Virus record (IMG/VR): IMGVR_UViG_3300009703_004110
Coordinates: 248,001-312,000 of that record
Direction: 5' to 3' (one strand)
DNA: 64,000 nt
Positions 10,801-58,297 of this stretch are shown here, piece by piece. The notes beneath the pieces are model-generated. The model was given only the letters and a program-made list of their open reading frames with translations. It searched no databases and was not told the origin of the DNA. Each line of letters starts with the position of its first letter. Positions within the stretch are counted from its first letter, which is position 1. A program made the translations under genes and the position numbers.

Positions 10801-10892
10801 TGGTACACCCGGTAGGATTCGAACCTACGATGAAGGATCTCTCCTTGCCTGGTTAAGAGCCAGGGGCGATCGGCCTCTCCGCTCACGAGTGC
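10801..10892 (-). tRNA. tRNA with Lys anticodon (CTT) and a long variable arm
   Basis: CCTGG-CTCTTAA-CCAGG; V-arm AAGGA-GAGA-TCCTT; 92 nt; CCA. Confidence 0.85.
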
Positions 10893-18908: not shown

Positions 18909-19082
18909 ATTTCCAATCCATTATTTTCTCCAATGGTATAACCAAACAGATTCGAACTGTTAACTCCCGGCCTTCCACCCGACGTTTTACCAAGATAGAT
19001 CATGAATCCCATAATCACCATCCTTAAACTACAGTTATAAAAATGAGCATTATACTTTGCAGTGTAGTATAATATACTTGCA

Positions 19083-29941: not shown

Positions 29942-30553
29942 CTATTTAAAATTATACTTAGCCTTAATCTCCAAATCAAGAGACGGTATACGAATATGCT
30001 GAATCATTCCGTGACTCTTTGCTTCTTCAGGAGTCAGCCACCAATCTGCGTGACCGCGATTGTGAGTCTCGGTTAGAAAATGCTCTTCATCTTTGCCACA
30101 GTTTCTTGCCATTCTTCTGTATACAAGCTGGTTAAGTCTTTCGGTTTCTGCGGCACCAGCTTTTATTTCCTCAACCTTACCCCATTCCATACTTGAAACA
30201 TCATGAATTAAGACAGTACTATTGGGTCCGGCAAAACGCATACCATCCTGCCCACAAGTCAAGAGGATAGCTCCACAACTCATAGCCTTACCTTCAACAA
30301 TTGTTGCTACAGGCAAAGAGGCTGACTTAATACAATCCATCATAGCAAGCAAAGAATATACTTGGCCGCCATATGAGTCAATTACAATTGGGATAACAGG
30401 CTGCCCTGTGCCATGAGCCTCTTCCATACTTTCAGTAAATTTCTTAACCGCATCTTCATTAAATTTATTAACGCGGATAATTACCGGAGGTATAACCAAA
30501 TCTTTTGGCTTACGTACAGTTAAAAGAGGGTCAATCTTGCAGGTCGCTCTCAT
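29942..30553 (-). CDS. clpP: ClpP-like protease subunit
   Basis: IDSYGG, GKAMSCGA, VLIHD, WLTPEEA. Confidence 0.88.
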   Translation of the reverse strand: MRATCKIDPLLTVRKPKDLVIPPVIIRVNKFNEDAVKKFTESMEEAHGTGQPVIPIVIDSYGGQVYSLLAMMDCIKSASLPVATIVEGKAMSCGAILLTCGQDGMRFAGPNSTVLIHDVSSMEWGKVEEIKAGAAETERLNQLVYRRMARNCGKDEEHFLTETHNRGHADWWLTPEEAKSHGMIQHIRIPSLDLEIKAKYNFK

Positions 30554-31435
30554 CGCTTTCTCCCTTTGTATTTTCTGTCAAAGCTTGCTAATTTTTGCAA
30601 GTCAATATTGGCAGGAGAATTCCTCATCTTCCCGCCATCAATAAATAAGTCTAATGCCTGATCTCTAGTGATAATAGCCGTAGACTTATCATCTTTGCGC
30701 GGGCCCCATCCTAAGCGTAGAAGGAAGTTTAGCATAGCACCTGGATCGACTCCAGAGTCCATGTAACTAATCATAGATGCAGCACCGTCCCGTTTTACTT
30801 AACTTCTTCTTATCTTTAAACAGAAGGCCGGTATGGGCGTATTGCGGGACTTTAATTCCTGACATTGGAATAGTGCTCAAAAAATAATAAAGCACAATCT
30901 GCTTACCAGTATTCTTCTGGTGGTCAACACCGCGAATAACATAATTTACACCAATATCAAAGTCGATATCGTCACAGACATTGGCAAAGTTATATGTTGG
31001 CGATCCATTAGACTTAATTAAAACCATATTTGAAATATAATCAAAGTCTGATTGTCCAATCTTAATATCTCCAGCAATATTATCATGCCATGATTTGCAA
31101 GGAAAGTTGTCCCAATCCTGGAAATCTAAAACTACTGCTCCATCGTCTAATCGCTTTGCGAAACCGCCATCAATCAGACACTCTGCTACGTGCTGATAAA
31201 GATCGAATCGGTTACTCTGATAAACGAGCATATCATAGTCAAGACTGAGCCAGTCCATAACTTTTAAAATATCATCAACTTTGCTTTGATCATTTCTTGC
31301 AATATCTGTATCATCAATTCTTAAGATGAATTTTCCGTCTGTAGCCCGAGCTGCCAACCAATTAAAGTAAGCGGTACGAGCCGTCCCCATATGCATATCA
31401 CCCGTGGGGCTCGGTGCTATTCTTGTATTAAACAT
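30550..31435 (-). CDS. gltX: Catalytic-domain-only glutamyl-tRNA synthetase (GluQ-RS-like), split by one extra A at KLSK
   Basis: RIAPSPTG.MHMG, LRIDDTD, IRGVDH; reads KKLSK-RDGAAS if one A is removed. Confidence 0.85.
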
Positions 31436-31655
31436 GCCTACACTCATAATGAAAGTCATCCAAAGTCATAGCCTTATATTCTGTGAACTCCGAATCTTTA
31501 TTTAATTTATGTGCAGCCAATACAGCGGTATCTTCTTTAAAGGAAGGACCAGCAGTAATGCTCCATAAACCAGGGTCATTACTATAAGGATTGCGAGACC
31601 AGCTTGCTACAACCCATAGATCGTAAACGCTTACGTCAGCTTCAGGTATTTCCAT
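31428..31655 (-). CDS. Hypothetical protein
   Basis: ORF with SD. Confidence 0.55.
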   Translation of the reverse strand: MEIPEADVSVYDLWVVASWSRNPYSNDPGLWSITAGPSFKEDTAVLAAHKLNKDSEFTEYKAMTLDDFHYECRHV

Positions 31656-31975: not shown

Positions 31976-32051
31976 TGGTAGCTCTGGTGGGAGTCGAACC
32001 CACACTGTAGCGGTTTTAAGCCGCTTGTCTCTGCCGTTGGACTACAGAGCC
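31976..32051 (-). tRNA. tRNA-Leu(TAA) with a short variable loop
   Basis: AGCGG-CTTAAAA-CCGCT; 76 nt; CCA. Confidence 0.88.
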
Positions 32052-40884: not shown

Positions 40885-41190
40885 TCAACCCCAAGTTGCT
40901 GATACAAGATAATGTCCAGGTTCAAGGTGCCCCTTTTTAATCAAGGCCATTATCATCATATTTAAACTTACAGTTCCGTCAGAATAGTCCGTCATTTCGG
41001 TGACAGCTTCGTCTACCCACTTCTGACGTGATTTAATTATATCACTCGTACAATCGAACAGAGTTTCTCCGCCGCTATCGTGCCCAGCAATTTCATCTTC
41101 ATATGGTTCACATGTGAATCCGAAATGCTCCTTGGCTAATGATAGAATATCTTCTATATCCGTCCAATATACTTCTAGTCTCTTTATCAT
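40885..41190 (-). CDS. Hypothetical protein
   Basis: ATGA overlap with the RF gene. Confidence 0.6.
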   Translation of the reverse strand: MIKRLEVYWTDIEDILSLAKEHFGFTCEPYEDEIAGHDSGGETLFDCTSDIIKSRQKWVDEAVTEMTDYSDGTVSLNMMIMALIKKGHLEPGHYLVSATWG

Positions 41191-41873
41191 TTGTTTAATT
41201 CCCCAAGCTGGCCTCTAGAGTAAGCTTTGTACGTAATAGTTTTATCATTGATGTGATCATAAACTTTGCCAGCTTGAACTCTAATGGTTCTAATCTTTTC
41301 TTCGCCTCTGCCTCCAGAACCAACTTGTTGCTTACGCTTACTTCTTCTGTTCAAATAAGCCTCTCTGTCAGCTATGGCTTGTAACTTTGCAGAAATAACG
41401 CTGAGTGCATTTTCTTTATTCTGCTTTTGACTACGTTCAGATTCGCATCGCACAATAATCCCTGTTGGCTTATGCTTAATCTGAACAGCAGAGTCAGTCA
41501 CATTTCTATGTTGTCCGCCAGCACCAGAACCTCGGGCAGTCTTTATTTCAAGCTCATCCTTTCTAAAGGATAATTGTTCAGCCTTTTGAGATTCTGGCAG
41601 CACGGCGACAGTAATCGTAGAGGTGTGCACCCTTCCTTTACGTTCAGTAGGCGGGACCCTTTGCCACCTTATAATTCCCGATTCTTTCTGAAATAACTTA
41701 CCGGCATTTTTTCCGATAACTTTAAATATAATAATTCCATCCCTACATGTAATCAAATCTATATCTAACTTATTTCTTTTTGCATACTTACAATAAATTT
41801 TGAATTGAATCTTCACTAGATCTTTTGAATCTGATCCGCCTTCGCCCGCTCTTATTTCTATAATTAATGTCAT
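41187..41873 (-). CDS. prfA: Class I peptide chain release factor, RF1-like, lacking domain 1
   Basis: EIRAGEGG, QRVPPTE (PxT), RVHTST, GAGGQHRN. Confidence 0.9.
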   Translation of the reverse strand: MTLIIEIRAGEGGSDSKDLVKIQFKIYCKYAKRNKLDIDLITCRDGIIIFKVIGKNAGKLFQKESGIIRWQRVPPTERKGRVHTSTITVAVLPESQKAEQLSFRKDELEIKTARGSGAGGQHRNVTDSAVQIKHKPTGIIVRCESERSQKQNKENALSVISAKLQAIADREAYLNRRSKRKQQVGSGGRGEEKIRTIRVQAGKVYDHINDKTITYKAYSRGQLGELNK

Positions 41874-47706: not shown

Positions 47707-49176
47707 TTAGCCGCTAGTTCTCATGGTTGGAAATAAGATTACATCCCGGATAGAGGTTCGATTTGTTAAAATCATAACCAGCCGGTCAATACCGATACCT
47801 TCGCCAGCCGTTGGTGGCATACCGAAAGTTAAAGCTCTAACGTAATCTTCATCAAAATACATTGCCTCATCATCGCCGGCATTCTTCCTCACTACCTGAG
47901 CAGCAAAGCGATCAGCTTGATCCATCGGATCATTAAGTTCGGAAAAGGCATTTGCAATTTCCATACCAGCAACAAATAACTCAAACCTATCGGTCACCCG
48001 TGGGTCGTCATCATTACGTCTAGCAAGCGGGCTGATCTCTGTTGGATAGTGAGTTACAAACGTTGGATTAATCAACTGATCTTCAATGTATGTATCAAAG
48101 ATTAATGTAAACATTTCTCCAATAGAGTCTGGTAGCTCACTCTCATAAGCTGGATTAGCTGACTGCCAAAATTCGTGCAAGTTTTGAATCGAATAAGGAT
48201 CGCCCTCAACACCAACCTTTGTTAGCAACTCATCAAACCTGGCTTCGCCCCATTGGCCGAAGTCAATTTCAGTATCACCATACGGTCTAACTAAATTACT
48301 ATAGCCAAACAAATCTCCAACCAACTCAGTAATCATATTCTGAGTCATCTTCATTAGATCACGATAAGTAGAGTGAGCCGCATAGAATTCAACAGTAGTG
48401 AATTCAGGATTGTGCTTGGTGGAAATCCCCTCATTTCTGAAATTCTTTCCAATCTCATATACACGATCTAGCCCGCCAACAATTAATCTCTTAAGATAAA
48501 GCTCTGGAGCAATTCTCATAAAGAGATCCATATCTAAAGCATTATGGTGCGTTACGAATGGCTTAGCTGACGCTCCGCCAGGAATCGGCTGTAAGGTCGG
48601 GGTCTCTACCTCTAAAAAACCTCGATCTTCTAAGTGCCGACGTACTCCGCTAACAATCTTAGATCTTGTAATAAAGACTTGCCTACTGTCATCATTGACT
48701 GCCATGTCTAAGTAACGCATTCGAGAACGTGTCTCTTGGTTAGTTAGACCGACATGCCTATCTGGCATACCCGCAATATTCTTGGAATACAAATGAATCT
48801 CTGCTACATTTACAGTCAACTCACCCATGCGCGTGCGCATCATGGTTCCAGCGAACCAGACCCAATCACCAATATCCATCGCCTTCCATTCGGCAAACTG
48901 TTCTGCACCAACAGTCTTCTTTGATACCATAATCTGAATGGCAGCATCTTGACCATTTACGCGGCCAAACCCAAGCTTACCAAGCTCATTCTTAAATCGC
49001 AATCTTCCAGCGGATGATACGGTCATATCATTCATGGCCGCAATAGAGTGCTCACTATAAGCAGTAACAATGCTCTCAACGCTGGTGTCAAATGGTATAT
49101 CATTCGGATATGGCTCGATTCCTTCTGCCCTGAGGCGTAGCGCCTTGTCTCTCATTTCTTCATTAAACTGAAACAT
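47707..49176 (-). CDS. lysS: Lysyl-tRNA synthetase (class II)
   Basis: GGASAKPF.THHN, RIAPELYLKRL, FRNEG, HNPEF, GMPPTAGEGIGIDRL. Confidence 0.97.
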   Translation of the reverse strand: MFQFNEEMRDKALRLRAEGIEPYPNDIPFDTSVESIVTAYSEHSIAAMNDMTVSSAGRLRFKNELGKLGFGRVNGQDAAIQIMVSKKTVGAEQFAEWKAMDIGDWVWFAGTMMRTRMGELTVNVAEIHLYSKNIAGMPDRHVGLTNQETRSRMRYLDMAVNDDSRQVFITRSKIVSGVRRHLEDRGFLEVETPTLQPIPGGASAKPFVTHHNALDMDLFMRIAPELYLKRLIVGGLDRVYEIGKNFRNEGISTKHNPEFTTVEFYAAHSTYRDLMKMTQNMITELVGDLFGYSNLVRPYGDTEIDFGQWGEARFDELLTKVGVEGDPYSIQNLHEFWQSANPAYESELPDSIGEMFTLIFDTYIEDQLINPTFVTHYPTEISPLARRNDDDPRVTDRFELFVAGMEIANAFSELNDPMDQADRFAAQVVRKNAGDDEAMYFDEDYVRALTFGMPPTAGEGIGIDRLVMILTNRTSIRDVILFPTMRTSG

Positions 49177-54217: not shown

Positions 54218-54526
54218 TTACTTTTTTGCGGAAAGAATATCTAAATAAAATAATATCTCCAAGTCATCGTCGCCAAGACCTGACATGAATTCTTCCCCAT
54301 CGATTGTAGTCGCACAGCCTGTGTGATTAATTTTAACAAAAGTGACTTTGCCGTGATCTGATACAAAACCAACCTTATCAGAATCCATAATAACAACATT
54401 CATACGCCTTGGCGACGTAACTCTAACTTTTCGACTATTGATTAACGAAATATAAACGAGCATGGCCCGGCTCTTTTTCTTAGCACAATATTCTATAAAA
54501 GAAAGCTTCCGCCCAATCTTTATCAT
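54218..54526 (-). CDS. Hypothetical protein, C-terminal-tag family
   Basis: Ends LEILFYLDILSAKK. Confidence 0.55.
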   Translation of the reverse strand: MIKIGRKLSFIEYCAKKKSRAMLVYISLINSRKVRVTSPRRMNVVIMDSDKVGFVSDHGKVTFVKINHTGCATTIDGEEFMSGLGDDDLEILFYLDILSAKK

Positions 54527-54984
54527 AGCAAAGGAAGGTGGCCGGTAATCCTATCAACATCTTCAACAAAACCTGGGCCAATTGCAACGGCTGTCTTTGT
54601 CGGAACACCATCAAACTCAGTGAATCCAGCGTCGGTGATTAAAGAGCACGGAAGATTAGCGGCCTTAGCCGCCTCATATAACTCCACTAACTCTTCTTCA
54701 CTATCAACACTAACACAGATCTTAGCAAACCTTCCGGCAATCCAAGCACAGACACCCTGTAGCTTTCTGATATAACTCTTAAGCCCCCTTGGACCGAAAT
54801 GTAAATCTACTACCCCGTAAATCCCGCCTTCTTCCCAAAGACCTATATCACCACTACCCCAATCAATTAGATCTAATAGTACAGCGCAAGAAGCATGAGC
54901 GCCTTGCGACACCATCTTACCTTTCCTCATATTAAGATCTTTTCTTATTATGATTACCTGCTTTGCTTTATAATTTTTGGTCAT
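54523..54984 (-). CDS. pth2: Peptidyl-tRNA hydrolase type 2
   Basis: KQVIIIRKDLNMRKGKMVSQGAHA, DAGFTE, TAVAIGP, ITGHLPLL. Confidence 0.93.
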   Translation of the reverse strand: MTKNYKAKQVIIIRKDLNMRKGKMVSQGAHASCAVLLDLIDWGSGDIGLWEEGGIYGVVDLHFGPRGLKSYIRKLQGVCAWIAGRFAKICVSVDSEEELVELYEAAKAANLPCSLITDAGFTEFDGVPTKTAVAIGPGFVEDVDRITGHLPLL

Positions 54985-55559
54985 ATATTCCTCGGTGGCT
55001 TTACGGCCTCAACATTTAAACTAACCAAAGTTCCTTTGTGCCATATTTCATCTGGCAGCTCATTACCATCCTCATCATGCCTTGGAACATAATCCCTGCT
55101 CCAGTCTCTTACATTAGCATGTGAAGTTGTAAATGGATCATATCGTTTGATATTGACAAATCCCATTTCAGACAAATCTTTTTGAAGCTGGTTGAAATCC
55201 CATCCCCAACAGTGATAGTCGTAAGGATTTCTTTGGCCACCGAACATGGTGCCTCTTATCTCAGATAGATCACCAGTCTCATTGTAGTGACGAATCAGCC
55301 CTTCAAAATCAGGAACCGAAATCCTTAGCATTCCGCCCGGTGCTAACAAATCAAGTAAGGTTGATAGAACATCTTTGTACTCGTGTCGTGAGAAGTGTTC
55401 TAAAACATGGCAAGCATAGATGTAATCAACACTGTTCTTTTCAAACTTTGTATGCAAATCTTTTATATCACATATCAAATCAGTAGCGTCAGTTTCATAA
55501 ATATCTATGTTTACAAAGCCTTCTATCTTTTTTGGTCCGCATCCTAAATGTAATTTCAT
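54981..55559 (-). CDS. Class I SAM-dependent methyltransferase
   Basis: LHLGCG, HVLEH, GGMLRISVPDF, SLNVEA. Confidence 0.88.
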   Translation of the reverse strand: MKLHLGCGPKKIEGFVNIDIYETDATDLICDIKDLHTKFEKNSVDYIYACHVLEHFSRHEYKDVLSTLLDLLAPGGMLRISVPDFEGLIRHYNETGDLSEIRGTMFGGQRNPYDYHCWGWDFNQLQKDLSEMGFVNIKRYDPFTTSHANVRDWSRDYVPRHDEDGNELPDEIWHKGTLVSLNVEAVKPPRNI

Positions 55560-55575
55560 TTTCCCTTCAATTTTA

Positions 55576-55651
55576 TGGCACGCTGTAAGGGATTCGAACC
55601 CTTGACGCGGAGGTCTAGAATCTCCCGCTCTGACCGCTGAGCTAACAGCGC
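55576..55651 (-). tRNA. Amber suppressor tRNA (anticodon CTA)
   Basis: 76-nt cloverleaf; GGAGA-TTCTAGA-CCTCC (A31/C39 mismatch), G73, CCA. Confidence 0.8.
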
Positions 55652-55730
55652 AAAATGAAATAGAAAGCTTAGGCCGAAGCCTTTGTGTCCTCTCTATTTC
55701 ATTACCCTTTGAATTTTGTTTTTAGCTTGC

Positions 55731-56105
55731 TTACTGAAGGCTTGCCGCATACAGCGCTGTCTTGGCTGAGTAGTTGCTGTTTGAAAGTGCCCAACTTCTC
55801 ATCCAATCCCAATCACCCATCACATAGGCAGAGAATTGAGTTTCAGAAAGGTCAATCTCTGTGTCTACAGACATTTCCTGCATTCGGATAATTCTATCGA
55901 AGGTTTTGACATGTGATTGCAGTTCTGCTAAGCTAAATTGCATATTAACTTTTTCGCCATTCTCTAGTTGGCGCAGCTTCTTCATTAAAATTCTCTTGGA
56001 CTCTCGACGATAGCCCTCCATCACCTCTTCATACATTTCGATGTGCTCTTCTCGGTTAGTTCTTAGCGCCTCAAGAACATCTTTTCTTAATACTGTTACA
56101 TTCAT
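55731..56105 (-). CDS. Conserved phage hypothetical protein
   Basis: NREEH...F..YV...W.W motif. Confidence 0.7.
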   Translation of the reverse strand: MNVTVLRKDVLEALRTNREEHIEMYEEVMEGYRRESKRILMKKLRQLENGEKVNMQFSLAELQSHVKTFDRIIRMQEMSVDTEIDLSETQFSAYVMGDWDWMRSWALSNSNYSAKTALYAASLQ

Positions 56106-56132
56106 TTCGTCACGGCTTCCCCTTATATTTCC

Positions 56133-56426
56133 TCACTTTGCATATACCTCGTTCAGAGGCCAGAATCCATATCCTGTACGGATCCCTTTGATTAATCTTC
56201 TTAAGATTGCAGCTTCCTCATTAGAAACTACACGAGACCAAAAGTGTCTTAAGAAATCTTCTCTATCTTCATAGTCAAGATATTGGTTTGAACCAAATCC
56301 ATAATGAAGTGGCTGATTAGATGGAATTTTGCTTTGTGCGTTATTCCACTCTTCTTCCTCCATTAATGCTACTCCGCCAAGATTAAACTCATCAGCCCAA
56401 TTATCATTAAAGTAAATTAACAACAA
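56133..56426 (-). CDS. Hypothetical protein
   Basis: DNWADEF, FGSNQ. Confidence 0.65.
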   Translation of the reverse strand: MLLIYFNDNWADEFNLGGVALMEEEEWNNAQSKIPSNQPLHYGFGSNQYLDYEDREDFLRHFWSRVVSNEEAAILRRLIKGIRTGYGFWPLNEVYAK

Positions 56427-56427
56427 T

Positions 56428-56655
56428 TCAATCTCCTTTGTTATTCAAAAATGAAATGAACACTCCAGAACGTTCATCCCACCATGTAAATTCAACATAA
56501 ATACTTGAAATAACATTTGCTGCACTACTTTTTTCAGTTACTCTCAGCCAAACTCCACCGGGCAAATTCATGGCTGATGTAACAATGTCACCACTACCAT
56601 AGCCACCATAAGATTTATCTACTCTTAACCACTTGCCCATTATGGGGTCGCTCAT
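56428..56655 (-). CDS. Hypothetical protein
   Basis: Small ORF. Confidence 0.55.
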   Translation of the reverse strand: MSDPIMGKWLRVDKSYGGYGSGDIVTSAMNLPGGVWLRVTEKSSAANVISSIYVEFTWWDERSGVFISFLNNKGD

Positions 56656-56658
56656 AAT

Positions 56659-57597
56659 TTAACCATTAAAAAGATGTTTACAAATAGCTCGACCTCTGCG
56701 ATCGATCTGCTTCCACTTAATCTTAAAACTATCAGATTCTCTTCCGCCAAATATCTTGGCATTACTATGAACCTCAGATAAGCCTGCAAGTAACAAAGTA
56801 ATTGCAACGATCTTATTTCTACAGAACTCTTCAGCTTCTGATGCTTTGATAGTATGAATCTCCATATCTCTCAGAATAAGCTCTCCAATAATTGGGTCGC
56901 CATTAATTTTATTCCAAGTCTGATATGATATCTTTGCGTGATCAGGAAAATGAACACGGCCTTCTTCATCCATTTCTTTACAGTAAGGCTTGCCACAATC
57001 ATGCATGGTAGCGTACTGCTGAATGATATCCGATGATAACAAACTATTTTTGATATCCTCTCTGTACCCTTCAAACCAAGAAGGCAGTTTCCAGTCTAGT
57101 CGCAACTCTTGTCCGTCCAGATAATGAAGCAAATCTTCATAATGCTTCCAGACGGATAGTCCGTGCTCGTAAATTGTTTGCCCTTTGGTCTGCTCTATAT
57201 GCTTCATATCTCGTACCACTTTTTGGTACGGCGTCTCTGGCTGACTAAATTCTTTTAGTGCCAGCGGAAGCGAGCCACAGAATCTTCGACCTTTATCTCC
57301 AGGCTCAATTGCAAGTGCAGTAATCTGATTGTTAATGTCGGGCTCTCGAAAAACAGAAAATCTAATCTTCTTCTTTTCGGCTCGTGCAATCAGCTTGATT
57401 AGCTCGTCTTCATCCTTCGCAGATAGAATTGCGATATGATTAGAAGACTGATACCATTCCGATTCGATCTCAGAATGCTCTGAAATGAATTCACGAAATG
57501 CGTGAAGTGCCTGTGCAATTTGTGTGCCAGGATCTAAATCCTTGCGAGTAATAATATATAGCTTGTCAGTTGGACAGAGGCCCTAAGTGTGTTCCAT
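56659..57597 (-). CDS. Pth2-like domain plus HD domain fusion, in-frame TAG at codon 5 (312 aa if read through)
   Basis: SD AGGAGAGG; ATG GAA CAC ACT TAG; KLYIITRKDL.PG.QIAQALHA...FREPDI...TALAI...LPLA; MHDCGKP...HFPDH. Confidence 0.85.
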
Positions 57598-57606
57598 TTC
57601 CCTCTC

Positions 57607-58014
57607 CTATAAGGTCTGTTGTATGCTATCCATATCTTCTATCTCTATTTCATCAAAGCCAAAGTCGGCTTGAAATGTGCGGACGCTAGTGCTATCTGTT
57701 TCATCAGAATGAATTGAGTGCCAATACTGCCCATCATATTCTGCGTTATTTACAAGATGCACATGATGCACATGATAGACTCTTCCATTAATTTCTTTAC
57801 TTAACCAAGTAGATAAAAGACGCTTATTCTTTCCCGATTCTCCAGCTTCGCCAGTAATATACCAGCCATGCCCAAATAATGAATCGGTGTTTCCAATGCC
57901 CCACTCATCAGAAGTTAAGTTATTATAAAGATGATTCATTCTATCTCTGTAGAAATCCCATTCTCCAATCCATAGAACATTATAACCAACATCTGAATAA
58001 GTATTCCTGCCCAT
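57607..58014 (-). CDS. Hypothetical protein
   Basis: SD GGGAG. Confidence 0.6.
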   Translation of the reverse strand: MGRNTYSDVGYNVLWIGEWDFYRDRMNHLYNNLTSDEWGIGNTDSLFGHGWYITGEAGESGKNKRLLSTWLSKEINGRVYHVHHVHLVNNAEYDGQYWHSIHSDETDSTSVRTFQADFGFDEIEIEDMDSIQQTL

Positions 58015-58066
58015 CTTAATTCTCCCATGTGATATGCAGGCCGGTAGGCGGCAAAATCTTTATAGT

Positions 58067-58297
58067 CTATTCACTCTCGTCAGCTTTCTCTTTCACTAAT
58101 TTAATATAAGCAGTATAAGCAACTTGACTATATGCCATGTTAATTGAGGCGGACATTACTACCAGTGATATACCAAAGATTGCTTCTTCATCTGTGCCAT
58201 GCATCATATCATAAATGATATAAGCAAATTCCTCTGGTGTGTTTTGTTCAATTAATTTCTTACAAAACCGGGCTGGGTCGATTGACTCTAATAACAT
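58067..58297 (-). CDS. Hypothetical protein
   Basis: SD GAGG. Confidence 0.55.
   Translation of the reverse strand: MLLESIDPARFCKKLIEQNTPEEFAYIIYDMMHGTDEEAIFGISLVVMSASINMAYSQVAYTAYIKLVKEKADESE

What the first reader, a model, noticed from the sequence alone, without database searches (positions are those of the whole stretch)
55576..55651. Amber suppressor tRNA in a standard-code phage that also encodes RF1
Standard numbering places CUA at 34-36 (U33, G37, G73). TAG-recoded phages usually pair such a tRNA with RF2 and have many in-frame TAGs. Here TAG ends many genes and the encoded factor is RF1-like, which suggests regulatory partial suppression. The amino acid charged is unknown; G73 with CUA is compatible with Gln or Trp. 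The A31/C39 mismatch may weaken it.
Basis: partly seen in the sequence, partly recalled or inferred. Interest (0 to 1): 0.7.

Follow-up and report, generated by a model that had tools for sequence, protein, structure and literature searches.

The report
Amber tRNA with its own gated gene
This standard-code jumbo phage carries a real amber-suppressor tRNA, and 1.9 kb upstream lies a conserved tRNA-end-enzyme gene that can only be translated by reading through an in-frame TAG at codon 5, a pairing repeated in dozens of other jumbo phages and apparently not described before.

Summary
Window 55576-55651 (- strand) is a canonical tRNA with anticodon CUA. The 332-kb phage uses the standard code: TAG ends 60 of 371 called genes. 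It also encodes an RF1-type release factor that lacks domain 1.

The new result is a probable target for the tRNA. The gene at 56662-57582(-) encodes a PTH2 peptidyl-tRNA-hydrolase domain plus an HD domain like the C-terminal part of tRNA nucleotidyltransferases. It has no ATG, GTG or TTG for 121 codons. Upstream lie a Shine-Dalgarno site, an ATG, three codons and an in-frame TAG.

In 65 non-redundant homologues from IMG/VR and cultured phages, the nearest in-frame upstream stop is TAG in 55 (background 18.5%, p about 1e-30). It is always 1-12 codons after an ATG. Other members carry internal TAGs (GAP32, Yersinia fHe-Yen9-04).

The one clade gated by TGA carries tRNA(UCA) instead of tRNA(CUA). 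Twelve of 13 whole genomes with a TAG-gated or ungated gene have a tRNA(CUA), usually just downstream on the same strand.

So "regulatory suppression" is supported by comparison, with a named target. The RF1 gene is not a conserved partner. The inserted amino acid and the purpose of the gate remain unknown.

The parts
55576..55651 (-). tRNA with anticodon CUA (amber-suppressor type). Features: G1.U72, G73, encoded CCA, anticodon loop UUCUAGA, A31.C39 mismatch.
   Evidence: ARAGORN. Rfam RF00005 56.9 bits. An alignment of 14 CUA tRNAs shows compensatory changes in 18 of 20 stem pairs with an invariant CUA.
55655..55700 (-). 14-bp hairpin with an inner UUCG-capped stem, followed by UUUU, directly 5' of the tRNA. 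It looks like a terminator or a processing element.
   Evidence: Sequence. RNA fold of 55570-55735(-): -47 kcal/mol, z = -2.56. Function not tested.
57600..57608 (-). Shine-Dalgarno-like AGGAGAGGG, 2 nt upstream of the leader ATG (the AGGAG core is 6 nt upstream).
   Evidence: Sequence. Across the family, an SD of 4 nt or more precedes the leader ATG in 23 of 45 short forms, against 3 of 45 for the conserved internal Met.
57586..57597 (-). Leader: ATG GAA CAC ACT (M-E-H-T), in frame with the ORF that follows.
57583..57585 (-). In-frame TAG, the proposed gate codon, at codon 5.
   Evidence: An independent Logan contig of the public run holding this DNA matches with 0 differences over 55500-58100, though it may come from the same sample. 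The homologous position is TAG in 55 of 65 clusters.
56659..57582 (-). 307-codon ORF with no ATG, GTG or TTG before codon 122. Residues about 5-108 form a PTH2 peptidyl-tRNA-hydrolase fold. Residues about 115-307 form an HD-fold domain most like the C-terminal part of tRNA nucleotidyltransferases (PHROG phrog_14850).
   Evidence: the ORF listing stop-to-stop. Pfam PTH2 39.9 bits against a cut-off of 23, and HD 17.2 bits, below the cut-off of 22. phrog_14850 E = 2.9e-60. AlphaFold2 model with mean pLDDT 94.9. Fold matches: 3erj_A Z 15.4 for the N-domain and 3wfr_F residues 248-446 Z 15.4 for the C-domain.
57607..58014 (-). Upstream 135-aa ORF. It also ends in TAG (57607-57609) and lies in the same frame as the leader and the gated ORF.
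   Evidence: No PHROG or Pfam match.
41187..41873 (-). RF1-type class I release factor without domain 1 (228 aa). Has the PPT tripeptide and GGQ.
   Evidence: It belongs to a clade of RF1-like proteins of about 220-230 aa found on very large contigs. In 27 aligned members GGQ is invariant, and the tripeptide is PPT in 19, PPN in 5, and PPS, PRT or deleted in one each.
54523..54984 (-). Second, stand-alone PTH2 peptidyl-tRNA hydrolase, downstream of the tRNA.
   Evidence: Pfam PTH2 105.7 bits.
54981..55559 (-). SAM-dependent methyltransferase-like ORF. Its ATG lies 17 nt after the tRNA's CCA, so it is probably co-transcribed with the tRNA.

Best explanation
The tRNA(CUA) is a working amber suppressor with a dedicated target. 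On the same strand, 1.9 kb upstream, ribosomes start at a Shine-Dalgarno-led ATG (57597-57595), translate M-E-H-T and meet UAG (57585-57583).

If RF1 wins at that codon, only a tetrapeptide is made. If charged tRNA(CUA) wins, the ribosome goes on to make a protein of about 312 aa. That protein joins a PTH2 peptidyl-tRNA-hydrolase domain to an HD domain like the one in tRNA nucleotidyltransferases, so it probably acts on tRNA 3' ends.

The enzyme's output is therefore set by the ratio of charged suppressor to RF1 activity. RF1 activity here includes the host's factor and, in this phage, its own domain-1-less RF1.

Elsewhere in the genome TAG remains an ordinary stop. Run-on there is short (median 7 codons) and presumably tolerated.

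What is shown:
- The tRNA, the leader plus TAG plus start-less ORF layout, and its conservation.
- The gate-codon/anticodon correspondence.
- The physical linkage of gene and tRNA, and the folds of the two domains.

What is inferred:
- That read-through happens in vivo and that the phage tRNA is what decodes the TAG.
- The purpose of the gate. My preferred reading is a delay or dose control, or a feedback loop in which a tRNA-end enzyme and the suppressor regulate each other.

Gate codons sit only in the non-conserved leader or in variable loops, and the tRNAs' discriminator bases vary. This suggests that the identity of the inserted residue does not matter.
For: 1. The tRNA is real and under structural selection. 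It is called by ARAGORN and Rfam. In 14 aligned CUA tRNAs, 18 of 20 stem pairs covary while CUA is invariant. The loop is CUCUAAA in 27 of 37 tRNAs. From my own knowledge, that is the loop of efficient E. coli amber suppressors.

2. The window ORF 56662-57582 has no canonical start for 121 codons, although the PTH2 domain begins at residue about 7. The only ATG with a Shine-Dalgarno site lies 4 codons before an in-frame TAG.

3. A genome-wide scan finds this as the only gene in the phage with an ATG, a short leader, a TAG and then a long start-less coding ORF. No such case exists for TAA or TGA.

4. The 80 homologous IMG/VR loci were retrieved through motifs in the C-domain, blind to the leader. 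With XacN1 and the window they form 65 clusters at 90% identity. In 55 of these the nearest in-frame upstream stop is TAG, and in 37 of 45 clusters at 70% identity. The background, over all called genes of four jumbo-phage genomes, is 18.5%. Binomial p is 1e-30 and 4e-20. The TAG always follows an ATG by 1-12 codons. The base after it is A in 39 of 55 cases.

5. Residues between the TAG and the next Met are conserved as protein (L-I-x-D before the invariant Met), or form the whole PTH2 domain (L012, L017, L096, L108, L110-L112, pT24).

6. Independent gate positions exist. GAP32 and Yersinia fHe-Yen9-04 have an internal TAG at codon 47, and both are annotated as two genes. L121 has an internal TAG. 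L087 has both a leader TAG and an internal TAG.

7. Gate codon and anticodon correspond. The two TGA-gated members (L122 and L125, one clade) come from records with tRNA(UCA) and no tRNA(CUA) among the tRNAs seen.

8. Co-occurrence and linkage are strong. tRNA(CUA) is present in G000-G003, G008, XacN1, RsoM2USA, RAS14, GAP32, Yen9-04, Arash and ME3. For pT24 only the locus was scanned, and it holds one (L137). In 29 of 64 loci the tRNA lies within 10 kb, and all 36 such tRNAs are on the gene's strand, typically 0.4-2.5 kb downstream.

9. The gated protein is tRNA-related: a PTH2 fold plus a tRNA-nucleotidyltransferase-like HD domain.
Against: - There is no expression, proteomic or aminoacylation data. 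Only a DNA run holds this sequence.
- G007, 97% complete, has the gene with two TAGs but no detectable tRNA(CUA).
- Seven clusters, plus the cultured phages ME3 and Arash, have no gate codon. Most of them still keep a tRNA(CUA) beside the gene. The gate therefore cannot be the tRNA's only reason to exist.
- The TGA/UCA correspondence rests on one clade.
- ATT follows the TAG in 22 of 55 cases, which leaves some room for non-canonical re-initiation.
- This window's tRNA has G37, U32 and a 31.39 mismatch, unlike the family consensus, so it may be a weak suppressor.
- The RF1 gene is not shared by the relatives tested.
- No excess of back-up stops follows TAG-ending genes. This argues that suppression is weak, or that no selection acts on it.
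Confidence: 0.68

Rival explanations
1. The ATG-x-TAG element is a mini upstream ORF. Ribosomes terminate at TAG and re-initiate just downstream, at ATT or the conserved Met, or the main ORF uses a non-canonical start. On this view the suppressor tRNA is irrelevant to the gene.
For: The codon after the TAG is ATT, ATC or ATA in 28 of 55 clusters. In short forms a conserved ATG lies 4-15 codons downstream. GenBank annotators placed starts after the TAG in XacN1 and pT24.
Against: - Re-initiation needs neither TAG specifically nor a shared frame, yet the in-frame stop is TAG in 85% of clusters against 18.5% background.
- The TGA-gated clade has UCA suppressors.
- In the window and in L012, L108, L110 and L112 no ATG, GTG or TTG exists before codon 115-121, and the six codons between the TAG and the PTH2 domain are not start-like.
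- Internal TAGs in GAP32, Yen9-04, L087 and L121 lie inside the fold, where re-initiation would truncate it.
- The conserved Met has almost no Shine-Dalgarno site: 3 of 45.
Confidence: 0.1
2. The tRNA is a general-purpose suppressor. It could buffer amber nonsense mutations in a large genome, act as a first step toward TAG recoding (the Borges et al. model), or corrupt host termination. On this view the gated gene is a side effect, not its purpose.
For: - Suppressor tRNAs occur in standard-code relatives of recoded phages (bioRxiv 10.1101/2021.08.26.457843).
- CUA tRNAs persist beside ungated versions of the gene (L010, L016, L128, L136, L146, ME3, Arash).
- Some phages carry two CUA tRNAs with different discriminator bases.
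Against: - It does not explain why one gene family carries TAG in 85% of members, or why the tRNA sits next to that gene on the same strand.
- TAG is not depleted as a stop here: 16% of genes.
- There is no sign of other in-frame TAGs. Four TAG-joined in-frame ORF pairs are separate genes with their own Shine-Dalgarno site and ATG, and for two pairs a full-length family match lies within one half.
- No back-up-stop enrichment follows TAG.
Confidence: 0.15
3. Decay: the TAG is an inactivating mutation in a dying gene, or the tRNA is a crippled copy with a mutated anticodon. On this view neither functions.
For: This copy of the tRNA has G37, U32 and an A31.C39 mismatch. A GluRS-like gene in the same window is frame-shifted.
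Against: - The gate is conserved across clusters that share only 38-54% protein identity, while flanking leader codons vary.
- The protein downstream of the TAG is well conserved and folds with mean pLDDT 94.9.
- The tRNA stems covary.
Confidence: 0.04

Closest known systems
Suppressor tRNAs annotated in the cultured standard-code jumbo phages XacN1 (two CUA), RsoM2USA (one CUA) and Atu_ph07 (one UCA)
   Same: These are the same kind of tRNA in the same kind of phage. XacN1's two copies share the D-arm with the window tRNA. The XacN1 authors read 18 amber stops through in silico and found no target (PMC5852040). The RsoM2USA authors only noted that UAG triplets are abundant in the phage and host genomes (PMC8504454).
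   Different: Here a target is proposed. XacN1 ORF364, RsoM2USA gene 91 and their homologues carry the in-frame TAG just upstream of the annotated start. It was missed because the leader is only 2-3 codons long, or because the TAG doubles as the stop of the previous gene. Atu_ph07 gave no match to the gene family.
TAG-recoded (code 15) phages: crAss-like, Lak, Agate and others (Borges et al., bioRxiv 10.1101/2021.08.26.457843)
   Same: A phage-encoded tRNA(CUA) decodes in-frame TAG in a standard-code host. The proposed role is timing of expression. Release factors can form part of the kit.
   Different: Those phages have many recoded genes, mainly structural and lysis genes, low coding density under code 11, and RF2 as the paired factor. 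Here only one gene is affected, coding density is 92.7% under code 11, TAG ends 16% of genes, and the factor is RF1-type.
The 'code-change module' of TGA-recoded Jade phages (suppressor tRNA + TrpRS + RF1), same preprint
   Same: A suppressor tRNA, an aminoacyl-tRNA synthetase and RF1 are clustered in a standard-code region. This window also holds a LysRS, the RF1-like gene and the suppressor within 15 kb.
   Different: In Jade phages RF1 is logical because the recoded stop is TGA. Here the suppressed stop is the one RF1 reads, so the two would compete rather than cooperate.
prfB (RF2) autoregulation through an early in-frame UGA (my own knowledge of E. coli prfB)
   Same: An early in-frame stop codon makes a gene's output depend on release-factor activity at that codon.
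   Different: prfB escapes the stop by +1 frameshifting and encodes the factor itself. Here the escape would be by a cognate suppressor tRNA, and the product is a tRNA-end enzyme.
Programmed stop-codon read-through in viruses (Qbeta A1 protein, retroviral gag-pol; my own knowledge)
   Same: A fixed fraction of ribosomes pass a stop codon to make a longer product.
   Different: Those cases rely on near-cognate host tRNAs and produce two functional proteins. Here the virus brings the cognate tRNA, and the short product is only a peptide of 1-12 residues.

Membership tests
tRNA (Rfam RF00005) | Cloverleaf that scores above the family's gathering threshold | tested here: met
   56.9 bits against 29, full-length match. 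ARAGORN cloverleaf.
Amber suppressor tRNA | Anticodon CUA at positions 34-36 in the standard register | tested here: met
   No alternative register was reported by either program.
Amber suppressor tRNA | Is aminoacylated and inserts an amino acid at UAG in vivo | not testable with these tools
   No RNA or proteome data exist for this phage. The indirect support is the conserved in-frame TAG target.
tRNA-Pyl (ARAGORN's label) | Atypical tRNAPyl architecture and an accompanying PylS/PylBCD system | tested here: not met
   The label follows from the anticodon alone. The drawn structure is an ordinary class I cloverleaf with a 5-nt variable loop and GG in the D-loop. The only PylS-like signal is a 26-bit side hit of the LysRS, against a cut-off of 178. 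PylBCD was not searched.
TAG-recoded (code 15) phage | Many in-frame TAGs in conserved genes and a clear gain in coding density when TAG is read as sense | tested here: not met
   Coverage is 92.7% under code 11. Opening TAG adds fewer ORF residues than opening TGA or TAA. No TAG lies inside tblastn alignments to G000. Only one gated gene was found.
TAG-recoded (code 15) phage | Paired with RF2 | tested here: not met
   The single release-factor gene scores higher for prfA than prfB and has PPT rather than SPF.
Class I release factor RF1 (prfA) | PxT codon-recognition tripeptide and GGQ hydrolysis motif | tested here: met
   P-P-T and GGQ are present. In 27 short homologues GGQ is invariant, and the tripeptide is PPT in 19, PPN in 5, and PPS, PRT or deleted in one each.
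Class I release factor RF1 (prfA) | Full four-domain architecture, scoring above the equivalog cut-off | tested here: not met
   203 bits against cut-offs of 423 and 400. The match covers profile positions 114-328 of 361, so domain 1 is absent. It is best called RF1-like.
PTH2 peptidyl-tRNA hydrolase (Pfam PF01981), N-domain of the gated protein | Family score above threshold, and the PTH2 fold | tested here: met
   39.9 bits against 23. Fold match to 3erj_A with Z 15.4 and rmsd 1.9 over 107 residues. Catalytic residues and activity were not examined.
HD-domain phosphohydrolase / C-terminal domain of class II tRNA nucleotidyltransferase, C-domain of the gated protein | The H...HD...D metal-binding signature and the HD fold | tested here: inconclusive
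   H194-D195, H215, D239 and H243 are invariant, and H140 is conserved in at least 90%, across 55 sequences. Pfam HD scores 17.2 bits, below the cut-off of 22. The best fold match is 3wfr_F residues 248-446 at Z 15.4, above generic HD hits at Z about 10-11. Activity is unknown.

The most novel reading that the evidence does not exclude
The tRNA(CUA) and the amber-gated PTH2/HD gene form a self-contained translational switch that has been carried by jumbo phages for a long time. On this reading the suppressor licenses synthesis of a tRNA-3'-end enzyme, and that enzyme in turn matures, repairs or deacylates the suppressor or other tRNAs. The resulting feedback loop would time or cap stop-codon read-through in the infected cell. 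In this phage a virus-encoded, domain-1-less RF1 would add a second dial on the same codon.
Probability: 0.3. Interest if true: 0.88.

Novelty: new variant of a known kind. Interest (0 to 1): 0.78.

Why it matters
Why standard-code jumbo phages keep amber-suppressor tRNAs has been an open loose end. It was raised explicitly for XacN1 and RsoM2USA. The same tRNAs also occur, without comment in the papers I could find, in GAP32, Yersinia fHe-Yen9-04, Stenotrophomonas RAS14, Acinetobacter ME3 and Salmonella phage Arash.

A single conserved gene that needs read-through gives that tRNA a concrete job. It would be a natural example of one-gene recoding by a virus-encoded cognate suppressor, sitting between ordinary read-through and full code-15 recoding.

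It also corrects the annotation of this gene family, which is currently split or N-terminally truncated in GenBank records. And it is directly testable in several cultured phage-host pairs. If the gate proves to be a timer or a feedback device, it is a compact natural part for controlling gene expression through stop-codon suppression.

Tried and rejected
1. An exact search of IMG/VR for the tRNA's anticodon arm gave four hits, and none is a tRNA.

2. I tried to assign the tRNA's isotype by nearest-neighbour similarity to 123 phage tRNAs. All neighbours are about 70% identical with mixed isotypes, so the result is uninformative. Acceptor and discriminator features vary across the family. The amino acid is left open.

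3. I looked for selection for back-up stops after TAG-ending genes and found none.

4. Four TAG-ending genes are followed in frame, after 9-12 nt, by the next gene. These are ordinary junctions in which the TAG overlaps the next gene's Shine-Dalgarno site. For two pairs a full-length PHROG match lies within one half; the other two pairs gave no family match.

5. The GluRS-like ORF that ends in TAG (30767-31459) looked like a possible target. Its continuation is in another frame, through a 1-nt shift at an AAAA run, so amber suppression would not repair it.

6. I asked whether RF1, LysRS or the GluRS-like gene are conserved partners of CUA tRNAs. RF-1 and tRNA-synt_1c are absent from XacN1 and G001-G004, and tRNA-synt_2 is present only in G001.

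7. Close relatives of this phage are scarce:
- The RF1 protein found no IMG/VR relative in a single-sequence scan.
- The 124-aa neighbour has one distant homologue.
- The methyltransferase has none.
- G001-G003 share only 13-41 tblastn HSPs with G000.

8. Atu_ph07 carries a UCA suppressor and would have been a natural control, but it gave no match to the gene family.

9. No RNA run holds the sequence, so expression could not be examined.

10. No Rfam family other than tRNA reaches its gathering score in the window, so no ribozyme was detected beside the tRNA.
Full report
**1. The observation**

The window is bases 248001-312000 of a 332,270-bp IMG/VR virus record. The record is 99% complete by CheckV, has 39.7% G+C, and carries nearly all its genes on the - strand. 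The only public run that holds this stretch is a subsurface metagenome.

ARAGORN finds 19 tRNAs in the window and 25 in the genome. One of them lies at 55576-55651(-) with anticodon CUA. Rfam's tRNA model scores it 56.9 bits over its full length.

- U33, CUA at 34-36, G37 and A38.
- An A31.C39 mismatch, G1.U72 and G73.
- An encoded CCA.

Neither program prefers a shifted register.

**2. The genetic code**

A simple gene call under table 11 covers 92.7% of the genome with 371 genes. Their stops are TAA 210, TGA 101 and TAG 60.

Reading TAG as sense adds less open-frame length than doing the same for TGA or TAA. The in-frame distance to the next stop is the same after TAG as after the other stops: the median is 7 codons, p = 0.83. 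No TAG lies inside tblastn alignments of other jumbo-phage proteins to this genome.

The phage therefore uses the standard code, and TAG is a common real stop.

**3. The release factor and the translation kit**

ORF 41187-41873(-) encodes a 228-aa protein with the PCRF and RF-1 domains, a P-P-T tripeptide where RF1 has PxT, and GGQ. It scores 203 bits for prfA against 149 for prfB. It matches only positions 114-328 of the 361-position prfA profile, so domain 1 is missing.

It belongs to a clade of RF1-like proteins of about 220-230 aa that occur on contigs of up to about 760 kb. In 27 aligned members GGQ is invariant. The tripeptide is PPT in 19 and PPN in 5; one member each has PPS, PRT or a deletion.

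The same 30 kb also encodes:
- a full-length class II LysRS;
- a GluRS-like catalytic domain that is frame-shifted;
- IF3 and peptide deformylase;
- a stand-alone PTH2 and a Thg1-like enzyme;
- NAD-salvage genes.

**4. CUA tRNAs recur in standard-code jumbo phages**

A blastn search of phage records matched the tRNA to one of two adjacent CUA tRNAs in Xanthomonas phage XacN1.

The XacN1 authors read the phage's 18 amber stops through in silico and found no target (PMC5852040). RsoM2USA is reported to have one CUA tRNA, and Atu_ph07 one UCA tRNA, with no target identified.

To find relatives I used the conserved neighbour at 56659-57219(-), which belongs to PHROG phrog_14850. Ten of its 12 IMG/VR loci held one or two CUA tRNAs within 10 kb. 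The records behind the other two loci (G001, G003) hold one elsewhere, as does G002.

These phages are only distant relatives of ours, sharing 13-41 tblastn HSPs. They also read as standard code, with 83-88% coverage and TAG as 7-13% of stops.

An alignment of 14 CUA tRNAs shows compensatory changes in 18 of 20 stem pairs with an invariant anticodon. None of XacN1 and G001-G004 has a release-factor gene, so RF1 is not a conserved partner.

**5. The target**

The phrog_14850 ORF as listed starts at a GTG, yet its frame is open for 307 codons (56662-57582). There is no ATG, GTG or TTG before codon 122.

The first 100 residues are a PTH2 domain (Pfam 39.9 bits, residues 7-97). Immediately upstream the sequence reads AGGAGAGGG, two bases, ATG GAA CAC ACT TAG, and then the ORF.

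So a well-placed Shine-Dalgarno site and an ATG are followed four codons later by an in-frame TAG (57585-57583). No other way to start the PTH2 domain is apparent. An independent Logan assembly of the public run matches this stretch without a difference, although it may come from the same sample.

**6. The layout is a family trait**

An alignment of the C-domain retrieved 80 IMG/VR loci. The search patterns lie in the C-domain and are blind to the 5' end.

For each locus, plus the window and XacN1, I walked upstream in frame from the invariant Met of the L-I-x-D-M-x-x-C-x-Q-T motif. The results were:
- The first stop met is TAG in 71 of the 82 sequences examined.
- That is 55 of 65 clusters at 90% identity, and 37 of 45 clusters at 70% identity.
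- For all called genes of four jumbo-phage genomes the figure is 18.5%, giving p about 1e-30 and 4e-20.

The TAG lies 4-15 codons before that Met, or 121-135 codons when a PTH2 domain intervenes. In every case an in-frame ATG precedes it by 1-12 codons.

A Shine-Dalgarno match of 4 nt or more precedes that leader ATG in 23 of 45 short forms, but precedes the conserved Met in only 3 of 45. The base after the TAG is A in 39 of 55 clusters. Residues between the TAG and the Met are conserved as protein.

In closely related loci the TAG stays while its neighbours change: MSYL*NHLIKQM, MSYL*NRLISDM, MSHL*NQLILDM, MSL*NQLIIDM.

In G000 this is the only gene with such a layout, and no comparable case exists for TAA or TGA.

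**7. Other gate positions, and the anticodon correspondence**

- Cronobacter phage GAP32 and Yersinia phage fHe-Yen9-04 start the gene normally but have an in-frame TAG at codon 47 (L-I-S-E-L-D-[T/S]-G-TAG-G-D). Both records annotate two genes there.
- L121 has an internal TAG in another loop. L087 has both a leader TAG and an internal TAG.
- L122 and L125 (one clade) have the leader layout with TGA (M-L-TGA and M-S-TGA). Their records carry tRNA(UCA), two copies and one copy, and no tRNA(CUA) among the tRNAs seen.

All gate codons fall in the unconserved leader or in variable loops. This fits the varying discriminator bases of the tRNAs: the residue inserted probably does not matter.

**8. 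Linkage and co-occurrence**

Of the 64 non-redundant loci other than the window, 40 hold any tRNA within 10 kb, and 29 of those hold a CUA tRNA. All 36 such tRNAs lie on the gene's strand, most of them 0.4-2.5 kb downstream. Their anticodon loop is CUCUAAA in 27 of 37.

A covariance model built from 39 CUA tRNAs ranked a CUA tRNA first in each of RAS14, GAP32, Arash, Yen9-04 and RsoM2USA. ME3's record annotates one 0.8 kb upstream of the gene.

Whole records were scanned for 15 phages that carry the gene:
- A CUA tRNA is present in 12: G000, G001, G002, G003, G008, XacN1, RsoM2USA, RAS14, GAP32, Yen9-04, Arash and ME3.
- The two TGA-gated records (G005, G006) have tRNA(UCA) instead.
- G007 has neither a CUA tRNA nor an explanation.

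For pT24 only the locus was scanned, and it holds a CUA tRNA (L137). G009 is 44% complete and carries an ungated gene; no suppressor was seen among the tRNAs examined there.

**9. What the gated protein is**

An AlphaFold2 model built on 55 homologues has a mean pLDDT of 94.9.
- Residues 5-108 superpose on archaeal and human PTH2 structures: Z about 15, rmsd 1.9 A.
- Residues 115-307 superpose best on residues 248-446 of the PDB entries titled "tRNA processing enzyme" (3wfo-3wfs): Z 15.4.
- In AlphaFold DB the C-domain matches the C-terminal halves of A-adding and CC-adding tRNA nucleotidyltransferases.
- Generic HD phosphohydrolases come lower, at Z about 10-11.

H194-D195, H215, D239 and H243 are invariant, and H140 is conserved in at least 90% of the 55 sequences.

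Domain order varies. XacN1 has PTH2 at the C-terminus, and many members have the HD-like domain alone.

G000 also encodes a nucleotidyltransferase head domain in an open frame of only 252 aa. That makes a split enzyme conceivable, but I did not test it.

**10. Interpretation**

The simplest account of sections 5-8 is that the suppressor tRNA decodes the gate codon. Synthesis of a tRNA-end enzyme then depends on the balance between charged suppressor and RF1.

The purpose of the gate is inferred, not shown. The candidates are:
- a delay until the phage tRNA is made, processed and charged;
- a low, fixed dose of a potentially harmful enzyme;
- a feedback loop between the enzyme and the tRNA.

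The third is suggested by the fact that ungated versions of the gene still keep the tRNA beside them (L010, L016, L128, L136, L146, ME3, Arash).

The phage's own RF1-like protein would act on the same codon and could tune the gate. Because relatives lack it, I treat it as an accessory.

This copy of the tRNA departs from the family loop (UUCUAGA against CUCUAAA), so it may be a weaker suppressor. That would suit a genome in which 16% of genes end in TAG.

**11. Caveats**

- Nothing here shows read-through in vivo.
- G007 has two TAGs in the gene and no CUA tRNA.
- The TGA/UCA correspondence comes from one clade.
- ATT after the TAG in 40% of clusters leaves a small opening for re-initiation. 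That would not explain the TAG specificity, the shared frame, the start-less PTH2 domains or the internal gates.

**12. Novelty**

Full-text searches found the XacN1, RsoM2USA and Atu_ph07 notes on suppressor tRNAs without identified targets. They also found the code-15 literature, but no description of an amber-gated gene paired with the suppressor in standard-code phages. The library is incomplete, so a prior description cannot be excluded.

The tRNA itself is a new member of a known kind. The one-gene gate with its linked cognate suppressor is a new variant of stop-codon recoding.

Noticed in passing
window 30550-31459 (-): A GluRS/GluQRS-like catalytic-domain gene is split by a one-base frame change at an AAAA run. 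ORF 30767-31459 ends ...KLSKTGRCCIYD-TAG. The other frame continues with the expected KLSK-RDGAASM...GAMLNFLLRLGW (ORF 30550-30774). It has no anticodon-binding domain. The cause could be a sequencing error, a pseudogene or a programmed shift.
   Followed up: partly
window 47707-49176 (-): A full-length class II lysyl-tRNA synthetase (NCBIfam 618 bits against a cut-off of 468) lies 6.4 kb downstream of the CUA tRNA. From my own knowledge, CUA-anticodon tRNAs are often mischarged with Lys or Gln in E. coli. No link was tested.
   Followed up: partly
window 31976-32051 (-); also G000:318040-318115: The tRNAs with Leu anticodons UAA and UAG are only 76 nt long, so they lack the long variable arm typical of bacterial tRNA-Leu. 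XacN1's CUA tRNAs are most similar to these (0.74-0.76 identity).
   Followed up: no
window 10801-10892 (-) and 18937-19038 (-): A 92-nt tRNA-Lys(CUU) scores only 43.6 bits in Rfam. A 102-nt Rfam tRNA match (30.8 bits) is not called by ARAGORN. Either could be an intron-containing or otherwise odd tRNA.
   Followed up: no
window 55655-55700 (-): A 14-bp hairpin with an inner GGC-UUCG-GCC stem is followed by UUUU and ends 4 nt before the tRNA's first base. It looks like a terminator or a processing signal.
   Followed up: partly
window 57607-58014 (-): The 135-aa gene upstream of the gate also ends in TAG and shares the frame of the leader and the gated ORF, with the two TAGs 8 codons apart. 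In RsoM2USA the gate TAG is itself the stop of an in-frame 186-aa upstream gene. Double read-through would give fusion proteins.
   Followed up: partly
window 41187-41873 (-) and proteins P0002-P0120: The RF1-like protein belongs to a large clade of domain-1-less factors of about 220-230 aa on very large contigs, presumably huge phages. The tripeptide is usually PPT and sometimes PPN instead of RF1's PAT/PVT. Its codon specificity is untested.
   Followed up: partly
G000:179355-179723 (-), outside the window: A tRNA nucleotidyltransferase head domain (PolyA_pol, 49.7 bits) sits in an open frame of only 252 aa. Meanwhile the gated protein's C-domain resembles the missing C-terminal part of such enzymes. 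A split enzyme is conceivable.
   Followed up: no
L087 (record G007), L121 (G008), L154 (GAP32), L152 (fHe-Yen9-04): Members of the gene family carry internal in-frame TAGs, and L087 carries two. G007 shows no CUA tRNA at all. GenBank splits the GAP32 and Yen9-04 genes into two or three short ORFs.
   Followed up: yes
whole record: The same phage sits on a 420,521-bp contig in ENA (ERZ27251152), whereas the IMG/VR record is 332,270 bp and is labelled 'provirus'. The extra 88 kb was not examined. At G000:317643-317736 ARAGORN calls an Arg(UCG) tRNA and a Gln(UUG) tRNA on opposite strands of the same DNA. One of the two is likely a mirror artefact.
   Followed up: no
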